From positions 124,001 through 188,000 of IMG/VR virus record IMGVR_UViG_3300047321_000238: 64,000 nt of DNA. One strand, 5' to 3'. Positions 28,745 to 45,113 of the stretch are shown here, piece after piece. Numbering within the stretch: position 1 is the stretch's first letter; each line of letters opens with the position of its first letter. Below the pieces are notes generated by a model that did not search any database, was not told the DNA's origin, and saw only the letters and a program-made list of their open reading frames with translations. Made by a program: the position numbers and the translations under genes.

Positions 28745-30064
28745 ATGGAACAAAAAACATTTATAAGTCTTATAAAAGACGGTGCTATAGAATCACAAAG
28801 TACTTATAAAATTCTTGCAAGTATTACTATTGCTCAAGCTATTTTAGAGAGTGGATGGGGTACTAGTGAATTATATCTTAAAGCAAATAATTGCTTTGGT
28901 ATAAAGTGGACAGAAGGTTGCGGATATGATAAGTATTTAAAAATCACTAAGGAGATTGTAGATGATATAGAAATAACTGTACAAGCCTATTTTAGAAAAT
29001 ATAATAGTCTTAAAGATAGTATTTTAGATCACTCTTTATTCTTACAAAAAGATAGATATAAAAATATCTTAAGTGATAGTGATTATGCATCAGTTGCTAA
29101 TAAGTTATATGCAGATGGATATAGTACAAGTCCTGAATATTCAAGTAAATTAATAATATTAATTAAACAATACAATCTATTTGATTATGATAAAAATAAT
29201 GAGAAAGAAGGCGTTACAATGACAAAATTTGCAATAGACTTTGGACATGGAGTAGGAAGCGACAGAGGAGCAGTTGGAGTTATAGCTGAAGAAACTATAA
29301 TCAATGCAGTTGGTTCTTTCGTAGTTAGTAAACTAAGAGCTCTAGGACACACAGTAGTTGAAGTTAGACCTTCAAGTGCAACAAGTGTTACAAACTCTTT
29401 ATCTCAAAGAGTATCTAAAGCAGATAATAACTATGTAGATATGTATGTTTCACTACATGCTAATGCAGGTGGTGGAGTTGGAACAGAAGTCTTCACTTAT
29501 GGTGCTAAAGAAGTACCTGAAGCAAGAAGAGTTTTAAATAACATTGTATCTTTAGGATTCACTAACAGAGGTATCAAGGATGGAAGCGACTTATATGTTG
29601 TTAAATATCCAGATGCTGTAGCAATGCTTGTAGAAGTTTGTTTTGTAGATACTCAATCTGATGTCAACAAATACAATACATTAGGTGCTGAAGCAATTGC
29701 TAATGCAATAGTAATGGGTTTATCTGGAACAATAACAGCTACAACTAAATTAGGTTGGAATCAAGATTCAACTGGTTGGTGGTACTGTACTGATATTGCT
29801 AGTAAGTCTTGCTATACTAATGCTTGGAAACAAATAGATGGAGAATGGTATAGTTTTGATGATCAAGGCTATGCAAGAAAATCTGCTTGGATTCAAGATA
29901 AAGGTCTTTGGTATTATCTACAAAGTTCATGTAAGATGGCTCATTCTGAGTGGTTATACATTAATGGCGAATCTTATTGTTTTGCTGCAAGTGGGGCATT
30001 GTACGTTAACTGCACTACTCCTGATGGCTATAAAGTGGATGCATCAGGAGCATGGATAATTTAA
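28745..30064 (+). CDS. Endolysin: GH73 glucosaminidase + Amidase_3 + cell-wall-binding repeats
   Basis: AQAILESGWG, NNCFGIK, GYSTSPEY; IDFGHG, SLHANA, LVEVCF; C-terminal W-rich repeats. Confidence 0.9.
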   Translation: MEQKTFISLIKDGAIESQSTYKILASITIAQAILESGWGTSELYLKANNCFGIKWTEGCGYDKYLKITKEIVDDIEITVQAYFRKYNSLKDSILDHSLFLQKDRYKNILSDSDYASVANKLYADGYSTSPEYSSKLIILIKQYNLFDYDKNNEKEGVTMTKFAIDFGHGVGSDRGAVGVIAEETIINAVGSFVVSKLRALGHTVVEVRPSSATSVTNSLSQRVSKADNNYVDMYVSLHANAGGGVGTEVFTYGAKEVPEARRVLNNIVSLGFTNRGIKDGSDLYVVKYPDAVAMLVEVCFVDTQSDVNKYNTLGAEAIANAIVMGLSGTITATTKLGWNQDSTGWWYCTDIASKSCYTNAWKQIDGEWYSFDDQGYARKSAWIQDKGLWYYLQSSCKMAHSEWLYINGESYCFAASGALYVNCTTPDGYKVDASGAWII

Positions 30065-31781: not shown

Positions 31782-32504
31782 TTGAATACATTAAAAGAAT
31801 TAATAGAACACATTAAAAAACATAAGGACGCCGTGATTATTATTGGTTCAGAAGTTAATAAACTTAAAACAGAATATACTACAGAAGATTTCAATGAAAT
31901 CTATAATAGAAAGAATCTTAAAAGAGCTCCCGAAAAACTATGGGACTTTTACAAAGATAATATTCTTACTGAAATCGATGATAACGATATGTACAAGCTG
32001 ATAAAAGAAATGGATTATGCATTAGTTGTTAATCAAAATATTAATAGCCCATTAAGAAGTAATGCATTTGATATTCATGGAAATGTCGATAGTTATATGT
32101 GTCCTAGATGTAAAACTATATATACGAGCGACTACGTTAATACAGAGGAAGACTTAAAGAAAGACTGTGAACTATGTGGAGCAACTATAAAACCTTCAGT
32201 GTTACTTGCAGGAGAAAGATATGATCAAGCTCAATTTGATGATCTAAAAGAGAAACTTATTGCTACTCATACTTTAATACTTATTGGTATGGATTATACA
32301 GAACAACCACTATTAGATTTAGTTGCTGATTATGGAGATATAAAAGCACAAGTAAATGCTAATGGTAATCCAGACGACCAAAAAGCTTTAGTAGTTATAC
32401 AAACAGAAGAGCAAGAATTTAATCCTAATCAAATTACATTCTGTGATTTTGTAGTAAAGGGCGATATAGAAGATTCTCTAGTCAGATTTATGAAAGAGTA
32501 TTAG
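31782..32504 (+). CDS. Degenerate sirtuin (Sir2-like)
   Basis: VNQNI, IHGN, CPRC...CELCGATIKPSVLLAGE; lacks GAGIS and the GTS motif. Confidence 0.65.
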   Translation: MNTLKELIEHIKKHKDAVIIIGSEVNKLKTEYTTEDFNEIYNRKNLKRAPEKLWDFYKDNILTEIDDNDMYKLIKEMDYALVVNQNINSPLRSNAFDIHGNVDSYMCPRCKTIYTSDYVNTEEDLKKDCELCGATIKPSVLLAGERYDQAQFDDLKEKLIATHTLILIGMDYTEQPLLDLVADYGDIKAQVNANGNPDDQKALVVIQTEEQEFNPNQITFCDFVVKGDIEDSLVRFMKEY

Positions 32505-33327: not shown

Positions 33328-33579
33328 GTGGAGATATTAAGGTATATAAAAGATGATTATGTTTATGTTTCTATGTTAGATAGGCTAAAGAATCTTGAGA
33401 TGAAAAACAGTATGATTGAATCTCAATTATGCATATTAATGTCACAATCTAATAATTCATGGGAACACAAAATGAAAATAGATAATGCATTAGCATCTAT
33501 AACAAATGTATTCTTAGAGTTAGGCATAGATTCAAATAAACTTAATCGAATAACAGATGCTTTAAAGGAAGTATTGTAA
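33328..33579 (+). CDS. ME[LI]L-tag protein, array member 3 (GTG start, MEILRYI)
   Basis: SD GGAGGA 8 nt before GTG 33328, in frame with track ORF 33298. Confidence 0.7.
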   Translation: MEILRYIKDDYVYVSMLDRLKNLEMKNSMIESQLCILMSQSNNSWEHKMKIDNALASITNVFLELGIDSNKLNRITDALKEVL

Positions 33580-33580
33580 G

Positions 33581-33847
33581 ATGGAGATATTAAATTATAT
33601 AAATACAGAATTAACCAAACGTTTTAATAGTCCAGGAATAACACTTGCTAAAATACCATCAATAAGTAGGATGACATCTACAAATTTAACTAATGCTATT
33701 CAAAATAATTTTGAAAATAAAACATTTTATGTTGGTGATATTGTTATGAATAATGAAAATGGAAATAGAAATATGAATTTTTATATGTATAATGGAACAG
33801 AGTTTGAAATGATTACTCAAGGAGGAGGAATATATGGAATTACTTAG
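33581..33847 (+). CDS. ME[LI]L-tag protein, array member 4 (MEILNYI)
   Basis: Starts 1 nt after the upstream stop. Confidence 0.7.
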   Translation: MEILNYINTELTKRFNSPGITLAKIPSISRMTSTNLTNAIQNNFENKTFYVGDIVMNNENGNRNMNFYMYNGTEFEMITQGGGIYGIT

Positions 33848-34175
33848 TTTTTTAAATAGCTCAAGCATTGAAGATATTCCTCTGCTTGAGTTAGAATCTC
33901 AATTAAAACAATTAAAGCAAACAGTTAGGACAAACTATTTAACAGTTACTTATGGTTCAAGAATTAAACCAATTAAGTGTGTTAGAGAGTATTACTTAAA
34001 TCCACTAACTAAAAAGAAAGTACCTAAAATAAACATTGTAAATGCTTGTACTTCAATACATGGTACATTTGGCATTAAAGATTGTGCCTCCGTTGATTGT
34101 AATAGTTGTCATCGAAAGATGATAGAGAATTACTTTAATGGGGAGGCATATTTAATCAAAAATAATAAAAAATAG
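33834..34175 (+). CDS. ME[LI]L-tag protein, array member 5 (MELLSFL), Cys-rich C-terminus
   Basis: SD GGAGGAGG. Confidence 0.7.
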   Translation: MELLSFLNSSSIEDIPLLELESQLKQLKQTVRTNYLTVTYGSRIKPIKCVREYYLNPLTKKKVPKINIVNACTSIHGTFGIKDCASVDCNSCHRKMIENYFNGEAYLIKNNKK

Positions 34176-34186
34176 CAGAAAAAACA

Positions 34187-34215
34187 TTGACAAGCTATTT
34201 TTTACTATATATACT
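34187..34215 (+). promoter_or_regulatory. SigA-type promoter
   Basis: TTGACA-17 bp-TATACT upstream of hup. Confidence 0.8.
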
Positions 34216-34252
34216 AAATATATAATTTAAATATGAAGGGAAGTTTTTTAAA

Positions 34253-34528
34253 ATGAATAAAAACGAATTAATATCATCAATGGCAGACAAGAGCAAATTA
34301 TCAAAGAAGGATGCTGAATTAGCATTAAAAGCTTTGATAGAAACAGTTGAAGAAACTTTAGTAAATGGGGACAAGGTTGCATTAGTTGGCTTTGGAACAT
34401 TTGAAACTAGAGAAAGAGCTGCTAGAGAAGGAAGAAATCCTAGAACTAAGGAAGTTATAAACATTGCTGCATGTACTGTTCCTGTATTTAAAGCTGGTAA
34501 GGATTTCAAAGATAAGGTTAATAAATAA
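34253..34528 (+). CDS. hup: Histone-like protein HU
   Basis: MNKNELI, LVGFGTFE, AAREGRNPRT, VPVFKAGK. Confidence 0.95.
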   Translation: MNKNELISSMADKSKLSKKDAELALKALIETVEETLVNGDKVALVGFGTFETRERAAREGRNPRTKEVINIAACTVPVFKAGKDFKDKVNK

Positions 34529-34530
34529 TA

Positions 34531-34680
34531 ATGAAAAAGACTAAGAAAATCTTATTATTGCTATGGATAGTATTAGGTATTTCTATACTTATAGTAAATG
34601 ACAAATATTATGCAGAAGCAATAGCAATGTGCTATGCGATAAATGGATTTTTAGATGTAGTTAATAAAGATTATAAATAA
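34531..34680 (+). CDS. Possible small membrane protein (49 aa)
   Basis: Basic N-terminus plus hydrophobic stretch; no strong SD. Confidence 0.4.
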   Translation: MKKTKKILLLLWIVLGISILIVNDKYYAEAIAMCYAINGFLDVVNKDYK

Positions 34681-34684
34681 AATC

Positions 34685-34709
34685 AAGAGCACGATATGTG
34701 CTCTTTTTT
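34685..34709 (+). terminator. Rho-independent terminator
   Basis: AAGAGCAC-5-GTGCTCTT plus T-tract. Confidence 0.75.
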
Positions 34710-34736
34710 AGTCAATAGAGGGGAGAGAACATACTA

Positions 34737-35345
34737 TTGCTTAATAAATCTGAACTAAAGGAAAAATATAAAGATGAAAAAGTATTTGTACTTCCATCTA
34801 ATCTAGTTCAAAATATCGGTGATAAATTTACTAAGTTAAAACACGATCCTGCAATATGGAGAAAGTATGATAACTTAGGACTTTATATTCCACGATATGA
34901 TGCTGAATATAATTTAGCATTTCAACAAATCATTCCATACTTCTTAGTAACTAACAATGACGAATCAAAGTTCTATGTTGGTAAAAGAATTAAGGGTGAC
35001 TCTAGACTAGAAGGAATGTTATCGCTAGGATTTGGAGGACATATTAACGAATGTGATGGAACTAATGAAGCTGTATTTAAAGCTTTATATAGGGAAATGA
35101 ACGAAGAACTTAATATTGAACCAACATCTAGTTTCAAATTCATAGGAACTATGAGAGACTTACTATCTGACACTTCAGAACACTTTGGACTTATCTTTAT
35201 TATAAAATCAGAAGAGACTACCATCTCTATAAAAGAAACCGACACTTTAGAGGGCTTGTGGATGACAAAACAAGAAATGTTTGATTCCTATGGCAAATTC
35301 GAGAGCTGGGCTAAATACTTGTTAGATTACTTTTATGAGAACTAA
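34737..35345 (+). CDS. NUDIX-family hydrolase
   Basis: QQIIPY, SLGFGGHI...ALYREMNEEL Nudix box. Confidence 0.8.
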   Translation: MLNKSELKEKYKDEKVFVLPSNLVQNIGDKFTKLKHDPAIWRKYDNLGLYIPRYDAEYNLAFQQIIPYFLVTNNDESKFYVGKRIKGDSRLEGMLSLGFGGHINECDGTNEAVFKALYREMNEELNIEPTSSFKFIGTMRDLLSDTSEHFGLIFIIKSEETTISIKETDTLEGLWMTKQEMFDSYGKFESWAKYLLDYFYEN

Positions 35346-35444
35346 TTAAATAAATATTTTAAATATTTAATGCTAGGTTATAAATATACGACCTAGCGTT
35401 AGTAATATAAGAGTAAATATTTATTTAATAGAGGAGAGAAGATT

Positions 35445-37664
35445 ATGCTAACGATAAGTAAAAGAGATGGTAGAGAACAAAAATTTGATTTATGGAAAGT
35501 TCAACATTCAATTAACCAAGCTGCATTTTCAATTAAGATGGAATTAAATACTATAGAATATGAAGAAGTCTTTAATAAATGCAAAGAATTAATTGGAGAA
35601 GATGGTGTTGTAGACGTAGAAAAACTACAAAATGCAATTGAAAAAGCATTGTATTTATGTGGTCACAGAAAAATAAGAGATTCTTATAAATCTTATAGAA
35701 AAGATCGTACACAAATTCGTGATACTAAATCAGATATCATGAAAGCCATTAATGCTATAGGTGTACAAACTGATAGAGATAATGCTAATGTTGGAAACAA
35801 CTTTAGTGCGAAGTTACTTAGAATAGCTTCTGAATCTAATAAGTGGACACAATTAGCTTTGATGCCTAAAGACCTAGCTAAAGAACATGAGAATTTAGAT
35901 TTATATTTTCATGACTTAGATAGTTATAACTTAACTCTTAATTGTCTTCATATACCTACAGGACAAATTCTTCAAAGAGGATTCAATACTGGATATGGAA
36001 CAATTAATAAGCCTAAGAGAATAGAAACAGCTGCAGATTTATCATGCATTCTTATGCAATCAACTCAAAATGATATGTTTGGTGGTCAATCACATCCAAA
36101 CTTTGATAATGATATGGCTCCATTTGTAGAATCTTCAAGACAAGAAATTGCTGAAGAACATTATTCTAGAATTGGTGAATTTGTTTCTGACGGATATTTT
36201 CATTATATCACTAAGAATAAAGAATCAATAGAAAAAGATATTGAAGTGAAAGTTGATAAATCAGTACATCAAGCTATGCAAGGAGTGGTTTATAATTTAA
36301 ATACCATGCATTGCCGTGCAGGTTCTCAAGTTCCATTTAGTTCAATTAATATAGGACTACCTGAATCTGAAGATGCAGCACTAGTATGCAAAGCGTTTTT
36401 AGAAGAATATGATAAAGGTCTAGGAAAAGGTGAACAACCTATATTCCCTAACATCATATTCAGAGTTAAATCAGGAGTTAATAGAGAGCCATCAGATCCA
36501 TATTACTACTTATTTAAGTTAGCTTGTAAAGTAGCTGCTAAAAGAATGAATCCTACATTTATGAATATAGATGCAGACTTCAATAAAGAGTATTATGATA
36601 AGGGATATATTCCTGCAACTATGGGATGCAGAACTGCATTAATGTCTAATGTTAATGGAGATCCTGGTGTTGAGGGTAGAGGTAACAATGCACCTACTAC
36701 TATTAATCTTCCTAGATTAGGTATTAGAGCAATGCTTTATGCAGATGAAGCAGTCAAAGAAGTAAACATGGTTGTTACAAGATATGATAATTACTATAAT
36801 AGTATTGTTGTTGCAAAGTTCTTTGAATTATTTGATGAAAAGATATCTTTATCTAGAGATTCATTAATGCATAGATACGGAGTACTGAAGAATCTAAGAG
36901 TTAAAGATTTACCATTCGTGGCAGGTCAAGGATTAATGAAAGGTTCTGAAGGGCTAGGACCAAATGATTCTATTGAACCAATACTTAAAAATGGTACTTG
37001 GGGAATAGGGTTTACAGGGCTTGCTGAAACATTAATAGCTATATGTGGTAAACATCATGGTGAAAGTGAATACGCAAGAGACTTAGGTGAGCAAATCATT
37101 ACTCATTTAAGAAATAGATGTGACGAATATAAAGAGATAGACAAAATGAATTGGAGTTGTTACGCAACACCTGCAGAAGGTCTTTCAGGCAAATTCGTTC
37201 CAGTGGATAGAAAAATATATGGAAATATTCCAGGTGTAACTGATAAAGATTACTATACAAATAGTTATCATGTTCCAGTTGATTGTATTATATCTATTAA
37301 AGATAAAATAGCAATCGAAGCACCATACCATAAACTTTGTAATGGAGGACATATTTCTTATATTGAAATGGATGATTATCCAGATGGAGACACTATTGAA
37401 AATATAATTAGATATGCTTACGAAAATACAAATATAAGTTATATGGGTATTAACTTTCATATAAGATATTGTAAAGACTGTGGAACTTATCTTCATGGAG
37501 AAAATGAATGTCCAAGTTGTGACAGTCATGAAATCCAAGGTATCTCTAGAGTTACAGGATATTTAAGTCTTGATGAGAGATTTGGTCCAGGAAAGTCTGC
37601 AGAAAGAGCAGCGAGAACTAATCATAATGGAAATCATAAAAATAATTATTATTTGGAGGAATAG
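35445..37664 (+). CDS. nrdD: Anaerobic ribonucleoside-triphosphate reductase (class III) with ATP cone
   Basis: ISKRDG ATP cone, QNDMFGGQS, ATMGCR, YATPAE, CxxC...CxxC, ISRVTGYL glycyl-radical motif. Confidence 0.95.
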   Translation: MLTISKRDGREQKFDLWKVQHSINQAAFSIKMELNTIEYEEVFNKCKELIGEDGVVDVEKLQNAIEKALYLCGHRKIRDSYKSYRKDRTQIRDTKSDIMKAINAIGVQTDRDNANVGNNFSAKLLRIASESNKWTQLALMPKDLAKEHENLDLYFHDLDSYNLTLNCLHIPTGQILQRGFNTGYGTINKPKRIETAADLSCILMQSTQNDMFGGQSHPNFDNDMAPFVESSRQEIAEEHYSRIGEFVSDGYFHYITKNKESIEKDIEVKVDKSVHQAMQGVVYNLNTMHCRAGSQVPFSSINIGLPESEDAALVCKAFLEEYDKGLGKGEQPIFPNIIFRVKSGVNREPSDPYYYLFKLACKVAAKRMNPTFMNIDADFNKEYYDKGYIPATMGCRTALMSNVNGDPGVEGRGNNAPTTINLPRLGIRAMLYADEAVKEVNMVVTRYDNYYNSIVVAKFFELFDEKISLSRDSLMHRYGVLKNLRVKDLPFVAGQGLMKGSEGLGPNDSIEPILKNGTWGIGFTGLAETLIAICGKHHGESEYARDLGEQIITHLRNRCDEYKEIDKMNWSCYATPAEGLSGKFVPVDRKIYGNIPGVTDKDYYTNSYHVPVDCIISIKDKIAIEAPYHKLCNGGHISYIEMDDYPDGDTIENIIRYAYENTNISYMGINFHIRYCKDCGTYLHGENECPSCDSHEIQGISRVTGYLSLDERFGPGKSAERAARTNHNGNHKNNYYLEE

Positions 37665-37666
37665 AT

Positions 37667-37870
37667 ATGGATTTTGAAAAAGGTATGACCTATGAAACAG
37701 AGGACAAAAAATTAGTAACCTGTTTTGAGTTAACAGAAACTTTTGCATTTTTATGTCCAATAGATTTAGATGGAAATTTAGATCTTACTAAAGTAGATGT
37801 ATATTCTACTAAAGAAGGAGTTACTCCAATAGAAACAGTTGAAGTTGCAGATAAAAATAAGGAATTATAA
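37667..37870 (+). CDS. Small acidic hypothetical protein
   Basis: SD GGAGGA. Confidence 0.65.
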
Positions 37871-37886
37871 AAGGGGGATTTTTATA

Positions 37887-38252
37887 ATGAAAGAATTAAG
37901 CACAATTCAAAAAAGAGAAAAATTAAACAAAGTATTAGCTATTGATGAAATAGGGCCAGGAGGAGCTAATCATGAATATTTGATAGTTTCAGATAGTGGA
38001 TTACAAGTACCTAAAGAAACAAAGATTCAACTTCAAAAAGGACCTAGAAAAGAAGCAGATTCTATCAATGGTGTAATTGATACTGACTTATTAGAAATAG
38101 TAAGAGATAGATTAAAAGCTTTCCAAGCTGGACCTTTTTCATCAAGAGAAAATGCATGTGCTTTAACTCATATAGAAGAAGCGTTAATGTGGATGAATAG
38201 AAGAGTTGAAGATAGAATTGAAAGAGATGTTTTGGGAAGGAATGAAAAATAA
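37887..38252 (+). CDS. tad1: Tad1-family Thoeris anti-defence sponge protein
   Basis: [77 protein letters not shown] closely match the C. botulinum prophage Tad1 as I recall it; SD AGGGGG before ATG 37887. Confidence 0.88.
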
Positions 38253-38716
38253 TGAATAAATATATGGGATTTAAATTATTAGAAGCTGAACCAATGACTC
38301 TTGGTGATTACAACAAGATGAAAGGATGGACGATTCCAGAAAATGAAGATCCATCGAAAGAAGGTTATGTTGTAAAATATTCAGATGATTATATTAGCTG
38401 GAGCCCTAAAGATGTATTTGAAGCATCTTATTTGCAAGTTAAAAATAATCCTAATCTTGCTAGTGGAGTTTCTGTTAGTCAAGAAATGGTTGATAACTTT
38501 ATTAAAGAAGTTTATGTACAAACAATTGGAACAAAAACAACTTTAGTTAGAGTTGAATTATCAAATGGATTTGAGATAGTAGAATCAAGTTCATGTGTAG
38601 ATGCAGCTAATTATAATGAAACTATGGGAAAAGAAATATGCTTAGAAAGAATAAAAAACAAAGTATGGGAATTGCTTGGTTTCTTATTACAAACAGCATA
38701 TAAAGGCATAAAGTAA
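38252..38716 (+). CDS. Two-domain phage protein: AEPM...SWSPK domain + N4 gp49/Sf6 gp66-like domain
   Basis: YMGFKLLEAEPM...EGYVVKY...SWSPKDVFEASY; LSNGF...SSCVD..NYN..MG.EIC...K.W..LGFLL. Confidence 0.65.
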   Translation: MNKYMGFKLLEAEPMTLGDYNKMKGWTIPENEDPSKEGYVVKYSDDYISWSPKDVFEASYLQVKNNPNLASGVSVSQEMVDNFIKEVYVQTIGTKTTLVRVELSNGFEIVESSSCVDAANYNETMGKEICLERIKNKVWELLGFLLQTAYKGIK

Positions 38717-39222
38717 TGCTTAACTTAGCTGGAGAATTAAAAAACAGTAATGCAAATGGACCAGGTTTAAGATATGTAATATTCACACAGGGGTGTTCAC
38801 ACCCCGTTAAGTGTGAAGGATGTCATAATTCTCATACTTGGGAGAAAAGAGACAATATGTTAATAACAGTAGATGAAATGGCATTAGATATTGTATCTGA
38901 AATGCCATTAATTAATGGTGTAACTTTTTCAGGTGGAGAACCATTTGACCAAGCTGCAGCGTTAACTGAATTGGCTATTAAGTTAAAGTCTGCTGGATTA
39001 AGTGTGATGTGTTATACAGGTTATACTTATGAACAGATAAGATCCTACGCAGTAATGCGTTCCATGGAATTTACTCAAATGAATCGACTATTAGACAATA
39101 TAGACATATTGGTTGATGGAAAGTTTGATATCAATCAAATTAAATGTGCGGGCCTCTATAGAGGATCTGCTAATCAAAGAATGCTATATTTAGAAAAAGG
39201 ACAAATAATCAAAATAGAATAA
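38716..39222 (+). CDS. nrdG: Anaerobic RNR activating enzyme
   Basis: NGPGLRYVIFTQGC, CX5CX2C, GVTFSGGEP, DILVDG, YRGSANQR. Confidence 0.9.
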   Translation: MLNLAGELKNSNANGPGLRYVIFTQGCSHPVKCEGCHNSHTWEKRDNMLITVDEMALDIVSEMPLINGVTFSGGEPFDQAAALTELAIKLKSAGLSVMCYTGYTYEQIRSYAVMRSMEFTQMNRLLDNIDILVDGKFDINQIKCAGLYRGSANQRMLYLEKGQIIKIE

Positions 39223-39235
39223 GGAGGTGCATAGT

Positions 39236-39844
39236 ATGCATAAAACATTAGTATTTTTAAAAGGGTTTGCAGATGGCAAAGATTATGACATGTTACAGTT
39301 AGCTATAACTAAAGCAAGTATACTTCATAAAGACCAAAAGAGAAAGTTAGGAGAACCTTATATAGAACATCCTATGAGAGTTGCTAATAAACTTAAGATG
39401 TTGAAATTGCAAGATGAAAATTTATTAGCGGCAGCATTACTTCATGATGTGTTAGAAGATTGCGAAGTGACAGAAGCTGAATTAAAAGAATGCTTTAATA
39501 AAGAAATTGTTACAATCGTAAAGTTACTTTCTAAGGATAAGGTTATACCTACTGGATTATATTATACGTATATATTATCAGATCCTTTTGCTACTTTAAT
39601 TAAGATTGCTGATAGATGTCATAATGTAAGTACCATGGTAGAAGCATTTACTAAGACAAAAATAAAAGAGTATATAGAGGAAACTAATAATTATGTTATT
39701 CCTTTATGTAGAGAAGCCGTAAATTTATATCCTCAATACAATGATGAAATATATCTTATGAAAGATCATATAGAAAGTGTATGCTATGCTCTTGATATTT
39801 GCATCAAGGCTATTGATGAAATGGAGCATAAACATGGATTATAA
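39236..39844 (+). CDS. HD-domain hydrolase, RelA/SpoT-hydrolase (small alarmone hydrolase)-like
   Basis: HKDQKRK.GEPYIEHP, AAALLHDVLED, IKIADRCHN; SD AAGGAGG favours ATG 39236. Confidence 0.8.
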   Translation: MHKTLVFLKGFADGKDYDMLQLAITKASILHKDQKRKLGEPYIEHPMRVANKLKMLKLQDENLLAAALLHDVLEDCEVTEAELKECFNKEIVTIVKLLSKDKVIPTGLYYTYILSDPFATLIKIADRCHNVSTMVEAFTKTKIKEYIEETNNYVIPLCREAVNLYPQYNDEIYLMKDHIESVCYALDICIKAIDEMEHKHGL

Positions 39845-40550
39845 AACTAAACAATTTAAAGACTTACTAGATAAAAGTAAGAAAATAGTTTTTATGACTG
39901 GAGCAGGGGTTTCGACTCACTCTGGTATTCCTGACTATAGATCAGCTGGTGGTATTTATACTGATAATCCAGAGTATATGCTTAGTGAAGATTGTTGGAA
40001 AAATGAATATATTAAGTTCCTACAATTTGTAACTGAACATTTTGACATGTCTGGATATGAACCAAATGATATTCATAATTGGATTGCAGGACTTGAAAAA
40101 GATAAAGAGATTACTGTAGTTACTCAAAATATTGATGGGCTTCATCAAAGAAGTGGATCAACTAATGTTATCACTTATCATGGAGATATTAACAATTGGG
40201 AGTGCAAGGGATGTTTTACAAAATCTTCCTTTGCTGAGATCAAAAATGGAAATAATTATTGTTCGAGATGTGGCTGTAAATTAAGCCCTGAAGTTGTTCT
40301 ATATGGACAAGATATCTATTTTGATAAAGATGCATTAGCAAAAGGTAAAATAAAAGAAGCTGATCTTGTTATAGTAATAGGAACATCTCTTTCTGTATTT
40401 CCTTTTGCTGATTTGGTGCAAGAAGCAATGTTCACAAAATCAGTATTGTTAAATGCAACTGAAACTGCAAATTACTTTAACGCTTTTGATTTAGTATTCT
40501 TAGAGGATGCTATAGAAGTTATAAAGAGGGTGGAAGATATTGAGTCATAA
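39834..40550 (+). CDS. Sirtuin (CobB-like NAD-dependent deacylase)
   Basis: MTGAGVSTHSGIPDYRS, TQNIDGLH, YHG, C..C/C..C, IGTSL.VFP. Confidence 0.9.
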   Translation: MDYKTKQFKDLLDKSKKIVFMTGAGVSTHSGIPDYRSAGGIYTDNPEYMLSEDCWKNEYIKFLQFVTEHFDMSGYEPNDIHNWIAGLEKDKEITVVTQNIDGLHQRSGSTNVITYHGDINNWECKGCFTKSSFAEIKNGNNYCSRCGCKLSPEVVLYGQDIYFDKDALAKGKIKEADLVIVIGTSLSVFPFADLVQEAMFTKSVLLNATETANYFNAFDLVFLEDAIEVIKRVEDIES

Positions 40551-40917
40551 ACTATATACAACTTACTTAGCCAAAATGAAACAAATACCAGACACTTGTC
40601 AGATAGCTATTATAATGAGGTTCCCTCCGTTCTTGCCTAAGGATGGAGACATTATTCATTGTCCAGAGTTATCGCCAAAAGGAAAACTATTAAATGTATA
40701 TAAAGCTGATAAAGACTTTGATACTTTTAAAGATAACCTTTGGCAACAATGGGAAAGCAATGAAGAAGGAGCAATGGATACTCTTAAGTTAATAGAAGAT
40801 GCTCTTGAACATAATGATATTTGTTTAGTTTGTTGTGAAAAAAATGTAAATGAATGTCATAGATTATTCTTAGGAGGATACTTTAAATTTTTAGGATATG
40901 AATGGGAGGAATTATAA
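40540..40917 (+). CDS. DUF488-like protein
   Basis: ELSP..LL, ICLVCCE...CHR. Confidence 0.65.
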   Translation: MSHKLYTTYLAKMKQIPDTCQIAIIMRFPPFLPKDGDIIHCPELSPKGKLLNVYKADKDFDTFKDNLWQQWESNEEGAMDTLKLIEDALEHNDICLVCCEKNVNECHRLFLGGYFKFLGYEWEEL

Positions 40918-41246
40918 TGTCAAAGAAAAATACGTACAGAGTACCAATAAACTTAATAAAAAAATTAGGTTTAACTATTGAAGCTGAATCTCAACTTGAT
41001 GCAGAAGCACAAGTTGAAGAGTTCTTAGAAAGAAATGTAGAGAGCTTAAAAGGTTATGAAGTAGATTACAATAAAGGAAAAATTACTTGTGATCAAGATG
41101 ATGAAATCATTAATGAAATTGCAGAAGACTTTGGAATAAAAGTTGAAGAATATTCTGGTACTGATTACTTTACTGGAGAATCAATTATGAGTGAAGGATT
41201 TGTTCATCAAATAGCTATCGATAATATAAATCCAATATTAAAATAG
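40917..41246 (+). CDS. Hypothetical protein
   Basis: SD GGAGGA; TAATG overlap. Confidence 0.7.
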   Translation: MSKKNTYRVPINLIKKLGLTIEAESQLDAEAQVEEFLERNVESLKGYEVDYNKGKITCDQDDEIINEIAEDFGIKVEEYSGTDYFTGESIMSEGFVHQIAIDNINPILK

Positions 41247-41257
41247 GGGGAATTGCA

Positions 41258-41836
41258 TTGCATCAATATAAAGGAGCTATTATAGCTCATATAGGACCTA
41301 TGTTTGGAGGAAAGACATCAGCATTAATTTCAGATGTTATTAAGTTCAAAATAGCTAAGTATAATACAGTGTTATTCAAACCTAAGAAAGATGAAAGATA
41401 TGCTAAAGATGCAGTAGTGAATCATCGAGGCGAAGAACTTGAAGCTATAAATGTAACAAGTATCTGTGATGTATTAAACTATATGAAAGAGAATCCAGAA
41501 GTAGACATTATAGCTATTGATGAATTTCAATTTCTTAAGGACAATCTATTAGGTAGTGAATATCTTGTTGGAAACTTAATTCACAATATCTTATTAGGTA
41601 ACAAGACTTTAATTATATCAGGATTGGATTTAGATAGTGATTTAATTCCATTTGATAATGTTAGAAATCTATTGCCATATTGTACTCATATAAATAAGCA
41701 TAAAGCTGTTTGTATGGTTTGTGGAGCAGATGCTACAACTAGTTATTGCAAAGTAGAAAAAGATGATCAAGAGTTAATCGGTGGTTCAGATCTTTACGAA
41801 CCTAGATGTTATCATTGTCATAGTTTAAAAGAATAA
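41258..41836 (+). CDS. tdk: Thymidine kinase
   Basis: GPMFGGKT, IAIDEFQF, SGLDLDSD, AVCMVC, IGGSDLYEPRC..C. Confidence 0.92.
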   Translation: MHQYKGAIIAHIGPMFGGKTSALISDVIKFKIAKYNTVLFKPKKDERYAKDAVVNHRGEELEAINVTSICDVLNYMKENPEVDIIAIDEFQFLKDNLLGSEYLVGNLIHNILLGNKTLIISGLDLDSDLIPFDNVRNLLPYCTHINKHKAVCMVCGADATTSYCKVEKDDQELIGGSDLYEPRCYHCHSLKE

Positions 41837-41839
41837 TCA

Positions 41840-41862
41840 AAGAAGGGTGTAATTCCCTTCTT
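41840..41862 (+). terminator. Hairpin after tdk
   Basis: AAGAAGGG-7-CCCTTCTT. Confidence 0.5.
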
Positions 41863-41881
41863 ATAAAAAGGAGGGATAATT

Positions 41882-42520
41882 ATGCAATCTTATTGTGTTA
41901 ATAAATTAGATATAAAAGGTTCAGAAAAAGAAGTTAAGAATTTTTTAAATGATTTTTCTTCATCGATAATTAATTTTAGTATGTTTGAAATTGTTGATTG
42001 TCCAGCTAGTGTCGTAACCTTTGAAAATTGGGCAATACGTAATTGGGGAACAAATGGAGATATATTTAATTGTAGTTCTTATTCAGAAGTAATGTCTTCT
42101 TATGAAGAAAATAATGGAGTTGTAAAAGTAAGTATTTATTACTACACTAAAGATACTCCAAATGAAACATTCGTAAAGAGAGCTTCAAAGATATATCCTA
42201 AGTTAACTTTTATTATAAGTTACTATGAACCTAATGTATTATGCACTGGAAAAACAACATATAAAAAAGGTATAGATGAAGACGGTGCAGACTATTATGA
42301 AGTAGATGAAGAAAATAGAGATGCAACAACTATATATGTATACGAATTCGCTATGAAAGAAAATCTTATATCTTTAGATGAATTATCAGAAGCTGTAAGA
42401 AGCTCATCATCTATTGTTAAGAATTATTTTAAAATAGATAAAGAAGAAGATGATCTTGTTTTAGACTTTAATGTTATAAAACAAGAATACTTAGACAACC
42501 TGAGTAAAGGAGATGATTAA
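41882..42520 (+). CDS. DUF1281/YubB ferredoxin-like protein (divergent)
   Basis: YCVN.L.I.G start, W...NWGT, S..YP.LTF...Y.E pattern. Confidence 0.5.
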   Translation: MQSYCVNKLDIKGSEKEVKNFLNDFSSSIINFSMFEIVDCPASVVTFENWAIRNWGTNGDIFNCSSYSEVMSSYEENNGVVKVSIYYYTKDTPNETFVKRASKIYPKLTFIISYYEPNVLCTGKTTYKKGIDEDGADYYEVDEENRDATTIYVYEFAMKENLISLDELSEAVRSSSSIVKNYFKIDKEEDDLVLDFNVIKQEYLDNLSKGDD

Positions 42521-42522
42521 TA

Positions 42523-42786
42523 TTGTCTAAATATGTTTATTATAAAGTAGTGAAATCAGAAGAACACATGCTTTATACAAAAGAAATAGCTTCAATATAT
42601 GATTTATATCTTCCTAATGGGGATCCTAGACAAAAATTAGTTTCTAATATATTAAAAGATTATATAAAAAAGAATATTGAAAATTATGAACGTATATATT
42701 ATGAAACAAGATATGGGCTTAGAGAAGTATTTTCTGCTAGTATTTACGAACCAGCAATGGAAGCATATTTCAAAGAGGGGGTATAA
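42523..42786 (+). CDS. Hypothetical protein
   Basis: ORF track; SD AAGGAG. Confidence 0.6.
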   Translation: MSKYVYYKVVKSEEHMLYTKEIASIYDLYLPNGDPRQKLVSNILKDYIKKNIENYERIYYETRYGLREVFSASIYEPAMEAYFKEGV

Positions 42787-42787
42787 C

Positions 42788-43060
42788 ATGTTTGAACTTA
42801 AAACTTTTTATGCTAATTTAACTAATAATCAAAAACTTGATATGATACAATTGTTTTATAATATGTATTACAATACAAATCAGGATGCAGCATTATATGG
42901 AGATGAATATTATTATTTAACTGCAGAAATACTGTTAGGAAGATTACCTATTAAGCTTCAATACTTAGCAGATAATTTTGTAGAAATACTATTAGATTTG
43001 TATCCAGACTTTAAACCATACTATAAACCATTTTTAGAAGAAGGTGAGACTTATCAATAA
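42788..43060 (+). CDS. Hypothetical protein
   Basis: SD GAGGGGG favours ATG 42788. Confidence 0.6.
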   Translation: MFELKTFYANLTNNQKLDMIQLFYNMYYNTNQDAALYGDEYYYLTAEILLGRLPIKLQYLADNFVEILLDLYPDFKPYYKPFLEEGETYQ

Positions 43061-45113
43061 AGAAGAATTAAAAGCTTTGTTAGCTTATTATGATGACTTA
43101 TATTATAATCAAGACATAAGTGAGATATCAGATTTTGAATACAATGTATTAAAAGAGAAGTACATTAAAAAGTATGGAGAATATGATTATATACCTGGAG
43201 AAGCATCTAAGGATAGTAAAAAATATACACATACAACTAATATATCTTCATTATCAAAATTACAAATAACTGATGAAGCAGGTATTAGAGAAAACCTTGA
43301 AAGATTATGGCCCGTTGTTATTCAAGAAAAGATGGATGGATTAACATTAGTTACTTATCCAAGCGGAGAAGATGTAACTCGTGGCAATGGTCACATAGGA
43401 GAAATAGTTACTGAAAATGTCAAGAAAGTAGATGGCATTGGAGATAAACTAGCTTATCCAGTTAGATCAGAAGTAGTTATGCTGCATTCTGAATTCAATA
43501 GAATAAATACAGAAAGAGTAGCAAGTGGATTAGAACCATTTGAAAACTGTAGAAATGCAGCTGCTGGAATGCTAAGACAAAAAGATTCTAATAAAGTTCA
43601 AGGTCTTAAAGCATTTGCATATAATATGATATTTGATGAAGAAGAAATTGACGAAGAAGATGCAGATGCAGAAAATCCAAACGCCAGAGCTCAAGTTCAA
43701 ATTGAATCATTAGAAATGCTTGGTTGGAATACAGTTGATTCTTATGAGCCAACAGATATAGATGATGCTATGGAATATATCATGAACTATGATAGATCTG
43801 TATTAGATTTTGATATTGATGGATTAGTTATAAAACATAATGGAAATAAAATATTTGGACAAACATCACATCACCCATTAAATGCAATAGCAATTAAGTT
43901 TGCACCAGAAGGTGGATGGACTACTTTAATAGATATTGAATGGTCTGTTGGTCGTACAGGCAAAGTTGTGCCTAAAGCTATATTTGAACCAATAAGTATA
44001 TTAGGTTCTACAGTTACTAAAGCTACCCTACACAATATTGGAATAGTAAATGCACTTGGATTAAATATGACTGAGAGCATTGGCAAGAATGGAGATTGTA
44101 TTACAAAGATATTTGTAATCAAAGCTAATGATGTTATACCAGCTATAATAGACGTAGAACACGCTCCACTTGATACTAAGAACTTATACTCTAAAAGTAT
44201 ATGGGAACCAACAACATGTCCAGATTGTGGCTCGGAACTTAGAAAAGAAAAGGACCAATTATATTGTAGCAATGAAAATTGTTCAAGTAGAGTATTAAAT
44301 AGATTAATACATTTATCTGAAAGAGATAGATTTAATATCGAAGATCTCGGAGAAGAAACAGCAATTAAATTAATAGCTAAATATAAGAACAAATTAGAAT
44401 TAATATTAACTCAAATTGAAAATAGTTATGAAGTAATGACTGAAGAAGATTATGATGAAGGAATCATAATTGAAGAGGCTATAGTTAAAGAAAAACTTGA
44501 GAAGTTACATCCAAGCTTTATATATGAATTAACTTTAGATGATATTAAATCATTAGAAGGTTTTGCTGAAAAATCAGCTACTAATTTATATAACGAGATT
44601 CAAAACTCTAAGAATATTGATTTTGATAAATTTTTAGCAGGATGTGGTATTCATTTAGTCGGAAGAAGAACATCTAAAGACATTGCTGAATTCTATTATA
44701 GTCCAAAAGACATGTCAGAAGTCGAAGCATTTGCATATGATTATGCCGATGGGTTTAAGAAGTTATCAACTTTAAAAGGAATAGGTAAAGAAACTATAGC
44801 TAGTTTAACTGAATATTATGGACCATATATAATTCCTTTTGGAGAATATGGATTAAATATTAAAGATGTTATTCCTAAAAAGAAAGCAACTAATCAAATG
44901 TCTATTGTAGTCACAGGAGCATTTGATAAATCTCGTGAAGAGATAAAAGCTATGATTGAAGATGCTGGCCATAAGATGGCTGGTTCAGTTAGTAAGAGCA
45001 CTGCTTATTTATTAGCGGCTCCAGGTGAAGAAAGCACTAGTAAGTATACAAAAGCTATAGAAGTTAATACTACAATAATTCATACATTGGAAGAGTTAGA
45101 AGAAATATTATGA
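43044..45113 (+). CDS. ligA: NAD-dependent DNA ligase
   Basis: EKMDG (KxDG), TRGNG, NCRNAAAG, DIDGLVIK, VGRTG, KATLHN, zinc finger, C-terminal BRCT. Confidence 0.94.
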   Translation: MRLINKEELKALLAYYDDLYYNQDISEISDFEYNVLKEKYIKKYGEYDYIPGEASKDSKKYTHTTNISSLSKLQITDEAGIRENLERLWPVVIQEKMDGLTLVTYPSGEDVTRGNGHIGEIVTENVKKVDGIGDKLAYPVRSEVVMLHSEFNRINTERVASGLEPFENCRNAAAGMLRQKDSNKVQGLKAFAYNMIFDEEEIDEEDADAENPNARAQVQIESLEMLGWNTVDSYEPTDIDDAMEYIMNYDRSVLDFDIDGLVIKHNGNKIFGQTSHHPLNAIAIKFAPEGGWTTLIDIEWSVGRTGKVVPKAIFEPISILGSTVTKATLHNIGIVNALGLNMTESIGKNGDCITKIFVIKANDVIPAIIDVEHAPLDTKNLYSKSIWEPTTCPDCGSELRKEKDQLYCSNENCSSRVLNRLIHLSERDRFNIEDLGEETAIKLIAKYKNKLELILTQIENSYEVMTEEDYDEGIIIEEAIVKEKLEKLHPSFIYELTLDDIKSLEGFAEKSATNLYNEIQNSKNIDFDKFLAGCGIHLVGRRTSKDIAEFYYSPKDMSEVEAFAYDYADGFKKLSTLKGIGKETIASLTEYYGPYIIPFGEYGLNIKDVIPKKKATNQMSIVVTGAFDKSREEIKAMIEDAGHKMAGSVSKSTAYLLAAPGEESTSKYTKAIEVNTTIIHTLEELEEIL

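What the first reader, a model, noticed from the sequence alone, without database searches (positions are those of the whole stretch)
38252..38716. Two-domain candidate nucleotide sponge translationally coupled to tad1
Seen: TAATG overlaps on both sides; N-terminal AEPM...SWSPK.VFE..Y domain plus a C-terminal gp49/gp66-like domain. My recollection, unverified, is that the N-terminal domain often fuses with DUF2829 (Tad2) and that gp49/66-type proteins include the cGAMP sponge Acb4. Inference: a bifunctional sponge whose N-terminal domain may bind a different, possibly unknown, immune signal.
Basis: inference. Interest (0 to 1): 0.6.

Follow-up and report, generated by a model that had tools for sequence, protein, structure and literature searches.

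The report
Acb4 sponge with unexplained extra module
A giant phage carries a gene for a known type of 'sponge' that mops up bacterial alarm nucleotides (Acb4), fused to a small, very widespread and highly conserved module that travels with at least six sponge families but whose own job has never been shown.

Summary
Window 38252-38716 (+) is a 154-aa ORF whose start and stop each overlap a neighbour by one base (TAATG).

- **C-terminal domain (residues 76-149).** It is an Acb4-family domain: PF13876, E 6e-26, and its best structural matches are all SPO1 Acb4 chains (9E4W).
- **Upstream gene.** It is a close homologue of Clostridium botulinum Tad1 (E 2e-49).
- **N-terminal module (residues 1-64).** It has no Pfam, NCBIfam or PADLOC family and no convincing solved-structure match. 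It is homologous to the N-terminal domain of RyR Tad (Pectobacterium phage CB1 gp68, hhalign 98%). A 2026 preprint calls that domain a fold of unknown function that forms a domain-swapped dimer and is dispensable for Thoeris I inhibition.
- **How common the module is.** It matches 4,545 protein clusters. It is fused to Acb4, Tad2, Sequestin, Tad1/Acb2, RyR and Lockin domains, also occurs alone, and is present once per protein and once per phage. It is more conserved than its Acb4 partner.

The Acb4 and Tad1 assignments are ordinary new members of known families. That the N-module is a second sponge is plausible from these associations but untested. No ligand is known.

The parts
38252..38716 (+). 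154-aa two-module ORF (N-module + Acb4-family domain)
   Evidence: (phrog_9467 full length, E 3.5e-70)
38252..38443 (+). N-module, residues 1-64: small beta-alpha-beta-beta-alpha domain homologous to the N-terminal domain of RyR Tad. No Pfam family.
   Evidence: pLDDT 95; 24 of 24 conserved columns kept
38477..38698 (+). Acb4-family domain (PF13876), residues 76-149
   Evidence: 9E4W, E 0.0018; Foldseek prob 1.00, TM 0.62-0.71
37887..38252 (+). tad1: 121-aa close homologue of Clostridium botulinum Tad1
   Evidence: E 2.1e-49 to 7UAV/8KBG
38250..38254 (+). TAATG stop/start overlap between tad1 and the ORF
   Evidence: read directly
38714..38718 (+). TAATG stop/start overlap between the ORF and the nrdG-like gene
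   Evidence: read directly
38234..38241 (+). purine-rich Shine-Dalgarno-like GGGAAGGA, 10 nt upstream of the ATG
   Evidence: read directly; function inferred
35445..37664 (+). nrdD-like anaerobic ribonucleotide reductase, the upstream flank of the cassette. The name rests on the translation and on synteny; it was not scanned against Pfam.
37667..37870 (+). 67-aa ORF with no family, between nrdD and tad1
38716..39222 (+). nrdG-like radical-SAM activase, the downstream flank
   Evidence: Fer4_12, E 3.4e-32

Best explanation
The ORF encodes a two-module phage counter-defence protein. It is made from one operon with a Tad1 sponge, inserted between nrdD and nrdG of a complete 248-kb jumbo phage.

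Shown by homology: residues 72-154 are an Acb4-family dsRBD-like domain. Like SPO1 Acb4, it should assemble into a tetramer and hold CBASS cyclic dinucleotides of the 3'3'-cGAMP type in pockets between protomers.

Shown by homology: residues 1-64 belong to a very large unnamed phage family, the same module that sits at the N-terminus of RyR Tad, where it forms a domain-swapped dimer.

Inferred: this module is not a mere helper of the Acb4 domain. It is an autonomous counter-defence unit that self-associates and most likely binds a target other than gcADPR or cGAMP-type dinucleotides. That target could be a different immune signal, which would make the protein bifunctional. Together with Tad1, the cassette would blunt both Thoeris and CBASS signalling.
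For: Acb4 part:
- PF13876, E 6e-26.
- Direct phmmer hit to 9E4W.
- The AF2 model (pLDDT 94) has SPO1 Acb4 chains as its 13 best PDB matches: prob 1.00, and rmsd 1.4-2.6 A over 64-72 columns in ten of them (three longer alignments reach 4.5-4.6 A).
- SPO1 contact residues K36, F48, E49 and N63 align with K95, F107, E108 and N122, and F62 with Y121 (alignment, residues named).

Tad1: E 2e-49 to CbTad1.

N-module:
- Homologous to gp68 N-domain: hhalign 98.2%, E 3e-14; blastp E 2e-11.
- 4,545 clusters at E<=1e-3.
- Fused to Tad2, Sequestin, Acb4 and Tad1/Acb2, to RyR and to Lockin.
- It sits as one unit among several in N-Acb4-Tad2, N-Sequestin-Tad1 and Acb4-N-Sequestin proteins.
- It also occurs alone, at 74-79 aa.
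- No protein has two copies (0 of 267), and there is one place per phage in 167 phage records.
- It is more conserved than its Acb4 partner: 74% against 57% mean pairwise identity.
- In the sister jumbo phage the Acb4 domain is kept (67% identity) while the N-module has decayed (35% identity, 6 of 24 conserved columns). The Acb4 domain therefore does not need an intact N-module.

Operon: there is no + strand terminator-like site after 34705 anywhere in the scanned stretch, which ends at 43200.
Against: No ligand or partner of the N-module is known. The only experiment on a homologue found gp68_N inactive against type I Thoeris and saw ligand only in the C-terminal domain. The homodimer prediction for the N-module gave no verdict. 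No solved sponge or nucleotide-binding fold resembles it: Foldseek E about 1, VIA Z at most 3.5. Fusion and co-occurrence are association, not function. Tetramer formation and cGAMP binding of the Acb4 domain were not tested here, and two SPO1 backbone-contact residues differ (Y57 to V116, T70 to I129).
Confidence: 0.45

Rival explanations
1. The N-module is only a self-association clamp. Its domain-swapped dimer stabilises or cross-links the oligomer of whatever sponge domain it is fused to, and it binds nothing itself. The protein would then be a single-function Acb4 sponge.
For: In the RyR Tad crystal the homologous domain swaps its first strand into the partner protomer and contributes to dimerisation, and gp68_N alone has no anti-Thoeris-I activity. 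The known partner families are all even-numbered oligomers: dimers, tetramers and hexamers. The module is at the N-terminus in 245 of 267 proteins.
Against: Most Acb4, Tad2 and Sequestin proteins work without it. Many genes encode the module alone (preprint). It occurs once per phage even where several sponge genes are present. The sister phage keeps the Acb4 domain while the module decays. Its conservation across host phyla is higher than that of its partner. The dimer prediction gave no verdict.
Confidence: 0.3
2. The N-module binds a host or phage protein rather than a small molecule. It might block a defence effector or sensor, or shield the sponge from systems that guard against sponges, such as Panoptes.
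For: Some anti-defence proteins act by binding effectors, for example Tad3. The weak fold resemblances are to peptide- or protein-binding Tudor, chromo and CarD-like domains. Conservation across phages of Bacillota, Pseudomonadota and Bacteroidota hosts would fit a conserved target.
Against: The fold matches are at noise level (Z at most 3.5). No partner is known. A protein target conserved across such distant hosts is less likely than a shared small molecule. All well-represented fusion partners are small-molecule sponges.
Confidence: 0.15
3. The gene has nothing to do with defence. It would be an RNA-binding or nucleotide-metabolism accessory of the nrdD-nrdG operon, and the dsRBD-like fold would bind RNA.
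For: The gene sits inside a ribonucleotide-reductase operon. Acb4 has a dsRBD-like fold.
Against: All eight Acb4 homologues tested bound 3'3'-cGAMP. The neighbour is a bona fide Tad1. The same gene pair lies in the head-gene module of a Clostridium perfringens phage, in the opposite order. Of 76 other phage nrdG neighbourhoods, only the sister phage has it.
Confidence: 0.05

Closest known systems
Acb4 of Bacillus phage SPO1 (PDB 9E4W; Pfam PF13876)
   Same: The C-terminal domain matches the family model far above its cut-off. It has the same fold, and it keeps the guanine-pocket residues K36, F48 and E49 and the adenine-pocket N63.
   Different: Sequence identity is only about 22%. Two phosphate-contact residues differ. 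SPO1 Acb4's N-terminal helical region is replaced by a separate 64-residue module. Tetramer formation and ligand binding are untested.
N-terminal domain of RyR Tad (Pectobacterium phage vB_PatP_CB1 gp68; bioRxiv 10.64898/2026.06.04.730250)
   Same: Homologous module at the N-terminus of a sponge protein: hhalign 98.2%, 41% identity. The authors describe it as a fold of unknown function that is often a single ORF.
   Different: gp68 keeps only 15 of the 24 family-conserved columns; for example it lacks the YN and GW motifs. The window's copy keeps all 24. The partner domain is RyR-like rather than Acb4. The solved structure is not in the PDB copy searched.
Orthologues in Clostridium perfringens phages vB_CpeS-1181 and vB_CpeS-CP51, and 'Gp49 family protein' of Clostridium beijerinckii
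   Same: Same length, same two-module architecture, 62-75% identity. In phage 1181 the gene is also adjacent to a Tad1 homologue.
   Different: There the gene lies between head-morphogenesis genes of small siphophages, with the order of the pair reversed, and it is annotated as hypothetical. Here it sits in an nrdD-nrdG operon of a jumbo phage.
Characterised two-sponge fusions: Acb4-Tad2 of Pasteurella phage Pm86 and Acb4-Sequestin of Pseudomonas phage Ab09 gp59
   Same: One polypeptide joins an Acb4 domain to a second small module, and both halves are active sponges in those cases.
   Different: The second module here is neither Tad2 nor Sequestin (no Pfam hit; hhalign against Tad2 0.4%), and it has no known ligand.
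N4-like phage 'gp49' (Escherichia phage vB_Eco_Jura JURA_0011)
   Same: It carries the same N-module at its N-terminus and lies beside a PF13876 gene in the known anti-signalling hotspot next to the virion RNA polymerase.
   Different: There the module is fused to Tad2, and the Acb4 domain is a separate neighbouring gene.

Membership tests
Acb4 (PF13876) cyclic-dinucleotide sponges | Match to the family profile above the curated cut-off | tested here: met
   91.1 bits against 27, E 6.3e-26, residues 76-149; confirmed on the genome
Acb4 (PF13876) cyclic-dinucleotide sponges | dsRBD-like alpha-beta-beta-beta-alpha fold superposable on 9E4W | tested here: met
   AF2 model pLDDT 94. Foldseek: 13 best PDB hits are all 9E4W chains, prob 1.00, TM by target 0.62-0.71
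Acb4 (PF13876) cyclic-dinucleotide sponges | Ligand-contact residues of SPO1 Acb4 | tested here: inconclusive
   K36, F48, E49 and N63 are identical and F62 becomes Y. V56 becomes C and I66 becomes M. Y57 becomes V and T70 becomes I. K81 lies outside the alignment
Acb4 (PF13876) cyclic-dinucleotide sponges | Homotetramer with pockets at protomer interfaces | not tested
Acb4 (PF13876) cyclic-dinucleotide sponges | Binds 3'3'-cGAMP and inhibits CBASS | not testable with these tools
   Needs purified protein and a CBASS strain
RyR-Tad-N-like module (unnamed family; phrog_872 and relatives) | Profile-level homology to gp68 residues 3-66 and to the family alignment | tested here: met
   hhalign 98.2%, E 2.9e-14; 24 of 24 columns that are at least 90% conserved are kept; phrog_872 E 2e-17
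RyR-Tad-N-like module (unnamed family; phrog_872 and relatives) | Domain-swapped homodimer | tested here: inconclusive
   Complex prediction with two copies scored 0.29 against a mark of 0.42, giving no verdict. In the monomer model of the module alone, residues 1-10 are not part of the sheet
Tad2 (DUF2829, PF11195), considered for the N-module | Sequence or profile similarity to Tad2 | tested here: not met
   No Pfam hit at E<=1. hhalign against an alignment of Tad2 domains gave 0.4%. Foldseek to SPO1 Tad2 8WJE gave E 1.1, prob 0.38
Sequestin (PF21825), considered for the N-module | Match to the family profile; all-helical fold | tested here: not met
   No Pfam hit. The model is mixed alpha/beta
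Tad1 (the upstream gene) | Full-length similarity to structurally solved Tad1 | tested here: met
   E 2.1e-49 over residues 1-121 to 7UAV/8KBG; PF24729 E 4.5e-10

The most novel reading that the evidence does not exclude
The 60-residue N-module is the founding piece of a further, very large family of phage sponges (at least 4,500 clusters, including phage N4-like 'gp49' and crAss-like phages). It would bind an immune signal not covered by its partners. Because it is combined with anti-gcADPR and anti-cGAMP domains in the same polypeptides, the signal would be something else, for example a Pycsar, type II/IV Thoeris, cyclic-oligoadenylate or still unknown messenger. The conserved Y20-N21, G25-W26 and S49-K53 positions would form the site.
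Probability: 0.3. Interest if true: 0.8.

Novelty: new member of a known kind. Interest (0 to 1): 0.58.

Why it matters
The Acb4 and Tad1 genes themselves add only another example of phage sponges, here in a rhizosphere jumbo phage and embedded in a ribonucleotide-reductase operon.

The wider value lies in the N-module. It is one of the commonest partners of known sponge domains. It is present in model phages and more conserved than the sponges it accompanies. It has no Pfam family, so it could not be found by the published Pfam-based fusion screen that discovered Sequestin. It has been mentioned only in passing as a fold of unknown function.

If it binds a signal, it would point to a further sponge family and perhaps to an immune messenger. 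If it is a pure assembly clamp, it would show how phages stabilise sponges of unrelated folds. Either answer is within reach of simple binding and defence-inhibition assays. The natural contrast between intact copies (this window, N4-like phages) and decayed copies (sister phage, gp68) gives ready-made controls.

Tried and rejected
- **Remote Tad2 homology of the N-module.** The similar W-x-P-S/K ... aromatic motif suggested this. It was rejected: hhalign 0.4%, and Foldseek to SPO1 Tad2 only at E 1.1.
- **Solved-structure searches with the N-module model.** Foldseek gave nothing at E<=0.001. VIA-align against 48,161 chains gave a best Z of 3.5, to Mfd/CarD/Tudor/chromo-like domains, which is noise level. 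A profile search of PDB sequences found only a chance 10-residue match to the HCK SH3 domain.
- **Homodimer prediction of the N-module.** Score 0.29, below the mark of 0.42. This is no verdict and is not used as evidence either way.
- **NCBIfam and PADLOC scans.** No hits for the ORF or for Tad1.
- **Net charge of the module as an argument against nucleotide binding.** The module is acidic in 90% of members, but Acb4 domains are acidic too, so the argument was dropped.
- **Is a sponge insertion between nrdD and nrdG common?** Of 76 phage nrdG neighbourhoods, only the sister jumbo phage has it.
- **Expression evidence.** Only the probable source sample (rhizosphere metagenome) holds the stretch in full. 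A wastewater run holds a 0.05 share of its words. No RNA run was found.
- **Promoter scan.** Fewer sigma-70-like sites than in shuffled sequence, so uninformative.
- **Single-linkage clustering of partner tails.** It merged everything through multi-domain proteins and was not used for counts.

Full report
**The observation.** The window holds a 154-aa ORF at 38252-38716 on the + strand. Read directly from the sequence, the stop of the upstream gene (TAA, 38250-38252) shares its last base with the ATG at 38252-38254. The ORF's own stop (TAA, 38714-38716) shares its last base with the ATG of the next gene. A purine-rich GGGAAGGA lies 10 nt upstream of the start. Homologues begin with the same M-x-K-Y-[IM]-G residues, which supports this start. 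Overlapping or tightly packed junctions are frequent in this window. The overlaps therefore indicate a compact operon and possible translational coupling rather than anything exceptional. The only + strand terminator-like site in the scanned stretch (33500-43200) is at 34685-34705, so there is none downstream of it in that stretch. That is consistent with one transcription unit running NUDIX, nrdD, orf67, tad1, this ORF, nrdG, HD and SIR2, and probably further to DUF488 and thymidine kinase.

**The C-terminal half.** Residues 76-149 match Pfam PF13876 (Phage_gp49_66) at E 6.3e-26, 91 bits against a cut-off of 27. Chang et al. (bioRxiv 10.1101/2024.12.30.630793) show that PF13876 is the Acb4 family. 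SPO1 Acb4 is a tetramer that holds four 3'3'-cGAMP molecules at protomer interfaces, and all eight homologues they tested bound 3'3'-cGAMP. The window's protein hits the SPO1 Acb4 chain directly (9E4W, E 0.0018, residues 76-138 against 18-80, no gaps). An AlphaFold2 model of the whole protein built on 37 same-architecture homologues is confident (pLDDT 94.1, pTM 0.81). Its 13 best PDB matches are all 9E4W chains (prob 1.00, TM by target 0.62-0.71; rmsd 1.4-2.6 A over 64-72 columns in ten of them, 4.5-4.6 A over 79 in three).

The ungapped alignment can be combined with the contact residues named in the paper. The PDB chain numbering is one higher than the paper's, which I inferred from the 97-residue chain against the 96-residue protein. 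On that basis K36, F48, E49 and N63 correspond to K95, F107, E108 and N122, and F62 to Y121. V56 and I66 align with C115 and M125. Y57 and T70 align with V116 and I129. The base pockets therefore look preserved and the backbone contacts less so. Membership in the Acb4 family is met for profile and fold. The tetramer was not tested here, and binding cannot be tested with these tools.

**The neighbour.** The gene at 37887-38252 (121 aa) matches Clostridium botulinum Tad1 structures 7UAV/7UAW/8SMD/8KBG at E 2.1e-49 over its full length and carries PF24729. The genome is a complete 247,883-bp virus record with direct terminal repeats. It has one Tad1, one Acb4 domain, one N-module and no Tad2; the Sequestin search was uninformative because its control found nothing anywhere. 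The window also encodes gyrase, Pol III alpha, NAD-ligase and an endolysin with choline-binding repeats. The only run that holds the stretch in full is a rhizosphere metagenome, probably the source. No RNA run was found.

**The N-terminal module: what it is not.** Residues 1-64 have no Pfam hit even at E<=1 and none in NCBIfam or PADLOC. They match only PHROGs of unknown function (phrog_872, E 2e-17). A model built on 41 diverse copies is very confident (pLDDT 95.1). It has strand 11-16, helix 17-24, a long loop, strands 37-42 and 48-52, and helix 53-59. It resembles no solved structure convincingly: Foldseek's best is E about 1, and VIA-align's best is Z 3.5 to Tudor/chromo/CarD-like domains. 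A profile search of PDB sequences is empty. A resemblance of its SWSPK...Y motif to the end of Tad2 did not survive a profile-profile test (0.4%).

**The N-terminal module: what it is.** A 2026 preprint (10.64898/2026.06.04.730250) describes RyR Tad, gp68 of Pectobacterium phage vB_PatP_CB1. Its C-terminal RyR-like domain sequesters gcADPR. [quoted passage not shown] I fetched gp68. The module alignment matches its residues 3-66 at hhalign probability 98.2%, E 2.9e-14. The window's protein matches it by BLASTP at 41% identity, E 2e-11. The window's N-terminal domain is therefore the same module. gp68 is a divergent member, however. It keeps 15 of the 24 columns that are at least 90% conserved in the family, whereas the window's copy keeps all 24. 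The negative result for gp68_N is thus weak evidence about canonical copies.

**Distribution of the module.**
- A word-indexed search restricted to residues 1-72 found 168 proteins. By my count of the 120 listed, 49 carry PF13876, 41 carry PF11195 (Tad2), 24 carry PF21825 (Sequestin), one carries PF24729, one carries Tad2 plus Sequestin, and four carry nothing else.
- An exhaustive profile search of 1.84 billion cluster representatives found 4,545 clusters at E<=0.001 and 2,057 at E<=1e-10.
- Of the best 147, 39 carry Tad2, 24 Sequestin, 17 Acb4 and 4 the Acb2/Tad1 hairpin, with one each for WDGH and OmpA-like.
- Longer proteins string the module with two sponge domains: N-Acb4-Tad2, N-Sequestin-Tad1/Acb2, N-Acb4-Sequestin and Acb4-N-Sequestin.
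- Published supplementary tables of Acb4, Sequestin and Lockin homologues already contain such fusions without comment.
- Standalone genes of 74-79 aa exist.
- The module is N-terminal in 245 of 267 proteins and never occurs twice in a protein.
- tblastn finds it in 167 phage records, with 167 places in all, so one place per record. These include N4-like, crAss-like, Vibrio, Klebsiella and Clostridium phages.
- In the N4-like phage Jura, the gene labelled gp49 is N-module plus Tad2, and the adjacent gene is the PF13876 protein.
- In two Clostridium perfringens phages, 62%-identical orthologues of the window's protein lie between head genes. In phage 1181 the orthologue sits next to a Tad1 homologue, with the order reversed.

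**Inference on function.** Four observations argue that the module has a job of its own.
1. The sponge families it joins are mostly found without it.
2. It occurs alone and once per phage, whatever sponge genes are present.
3. Within the N+Acb4 proteins it is more conserved than the Acb4 domain: 74% against 57% mean pairwise identity, higher in 581 of 666 pairs.
4. In the sister jumbo phage (245 kb, NrdG 65% identical, same NUDIX-nrdD-tad1-X-nrdG order), the Acb4 domain is 67% identical but the module is only 35% identical. That copy keeps 6 of 24 conserved columns and scores 17.5 bits against the module HMM.

The residues lost in that copy lie in helix 17-24, the loop that follows it and the SWSPK turn, while much of the strand sequence remains recognisable. 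This is what one would expect if a functional surface rather than the fold had been given up; this last point is inference. Because the module is combined in single polypeptides with both anti-gcADPR and anti-cGAMP domains, a redundant target is unlikely. That agrees with gp68_N not inhibiting type I Thoeris.

Against this, there is no ligand, no partner and no informative structural analogue, and the homodimer prediction gave no verdict. A pure assembly clamp remains a serious rival, since it is the only role actually seen in a crystal.

**Verdict.** The gene is a new member of the Acb4 family, next to a new member of the Tad1 family. The architecture is already present, uncommented, in public lists and in published phage genomes. 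I put it at about 0.3. I put the broader reading, that the module is an autonomous counter-defence unit and not a helper of Acb4, at about 0.45.

Noticed in passing
window 31782-32504, 34737-35345, 39227-39844, 39777-40550, 40540-40917: The sponge cassette sits among two SIR2-family genes, a NUDIX hydrolase, an HD_4 (SpoT-like) hydrolase and a DUF488 gene. This is a cluster of NAD- and nucleotide-handling genes that might also bear on defence or counter-defence.
   Followed up: no
L015:3507-4001 (IMGVR_UViG_3300045988_175595, 245 kb): The sister jumbo phage has the same NUDIX-nrdD-tad1-X-nrdG order. The N-module of its orthologue has decayed (6 of 24 conserved columns) while the Acb4 domain is intact. 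Its tad1 starts with a GTG that overlaps the end of nrdD, and it lacks the 67-aa ORF.
   Followed up: partly
L001:4472-4843 (Clostridium phage vB_CpeS-1181, MW478292.1): The Tad1 homologue (63% identical to the window's) is annotated 'ABC transporter ATPase', the same misleading name that PDB entry 7UAV carries. The two-module gene precedes it there, so the gene order is reversed relative to the window.
   Followed up: partly
L008:2103-2959 (Escherichia phage vB_Eco_Jura): In this N4-like phage, the gene labelled 'gp49' is N-module plus Tad2 (PF11195). The PF13876 domain, which is named after N4 Gp49, is in the preceding gene. The names are confusing for anyone using 'gp49' as a family label.
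   Followed up: partly
proteins P0232, P0215, P0145, P0204, P0221, P0256, P0091/P0144: The module is also fused to a WDGH domain (PF25311), to an OmpA-like domain, and to some 35 C-terminal tails of 45-170 aa that found no relative among the other tails; the five of them put to a Pfam scan had no hit. By the logic that uncovered Sequestin, these tails are candidates for further sponge families.
   Followed up: partly
L009:3729-4166 (protein P0123): A 145-aa protein two genes downstream of an N+Acb4 orthologue ends its first domain with KPDVFEKTYEP and begins with KKPVEIEAFQ. This is reminiscent of the module's own ends. It has no Pfam hit. A possible distant relationship was not tested.
   Followed up: no
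window 28745-30064: An endolysin with glucosaminidase, amidase_3 and choline-binding repeats, and Clostridium phages as the nearest DNA relatives of the cassette, suggest a Gram-positive, Clostridium-like host. The only full holder is a rhizosphere metagenome.
   Followed up: no
window 37667-37870: A 67-aa ORF packed between nrdD and tad1 has no hit in Pfam, PHROGs or NCBIfam and is absent from the sister phage. It may be another small accessory gene of the cassette.
   Followed up: no
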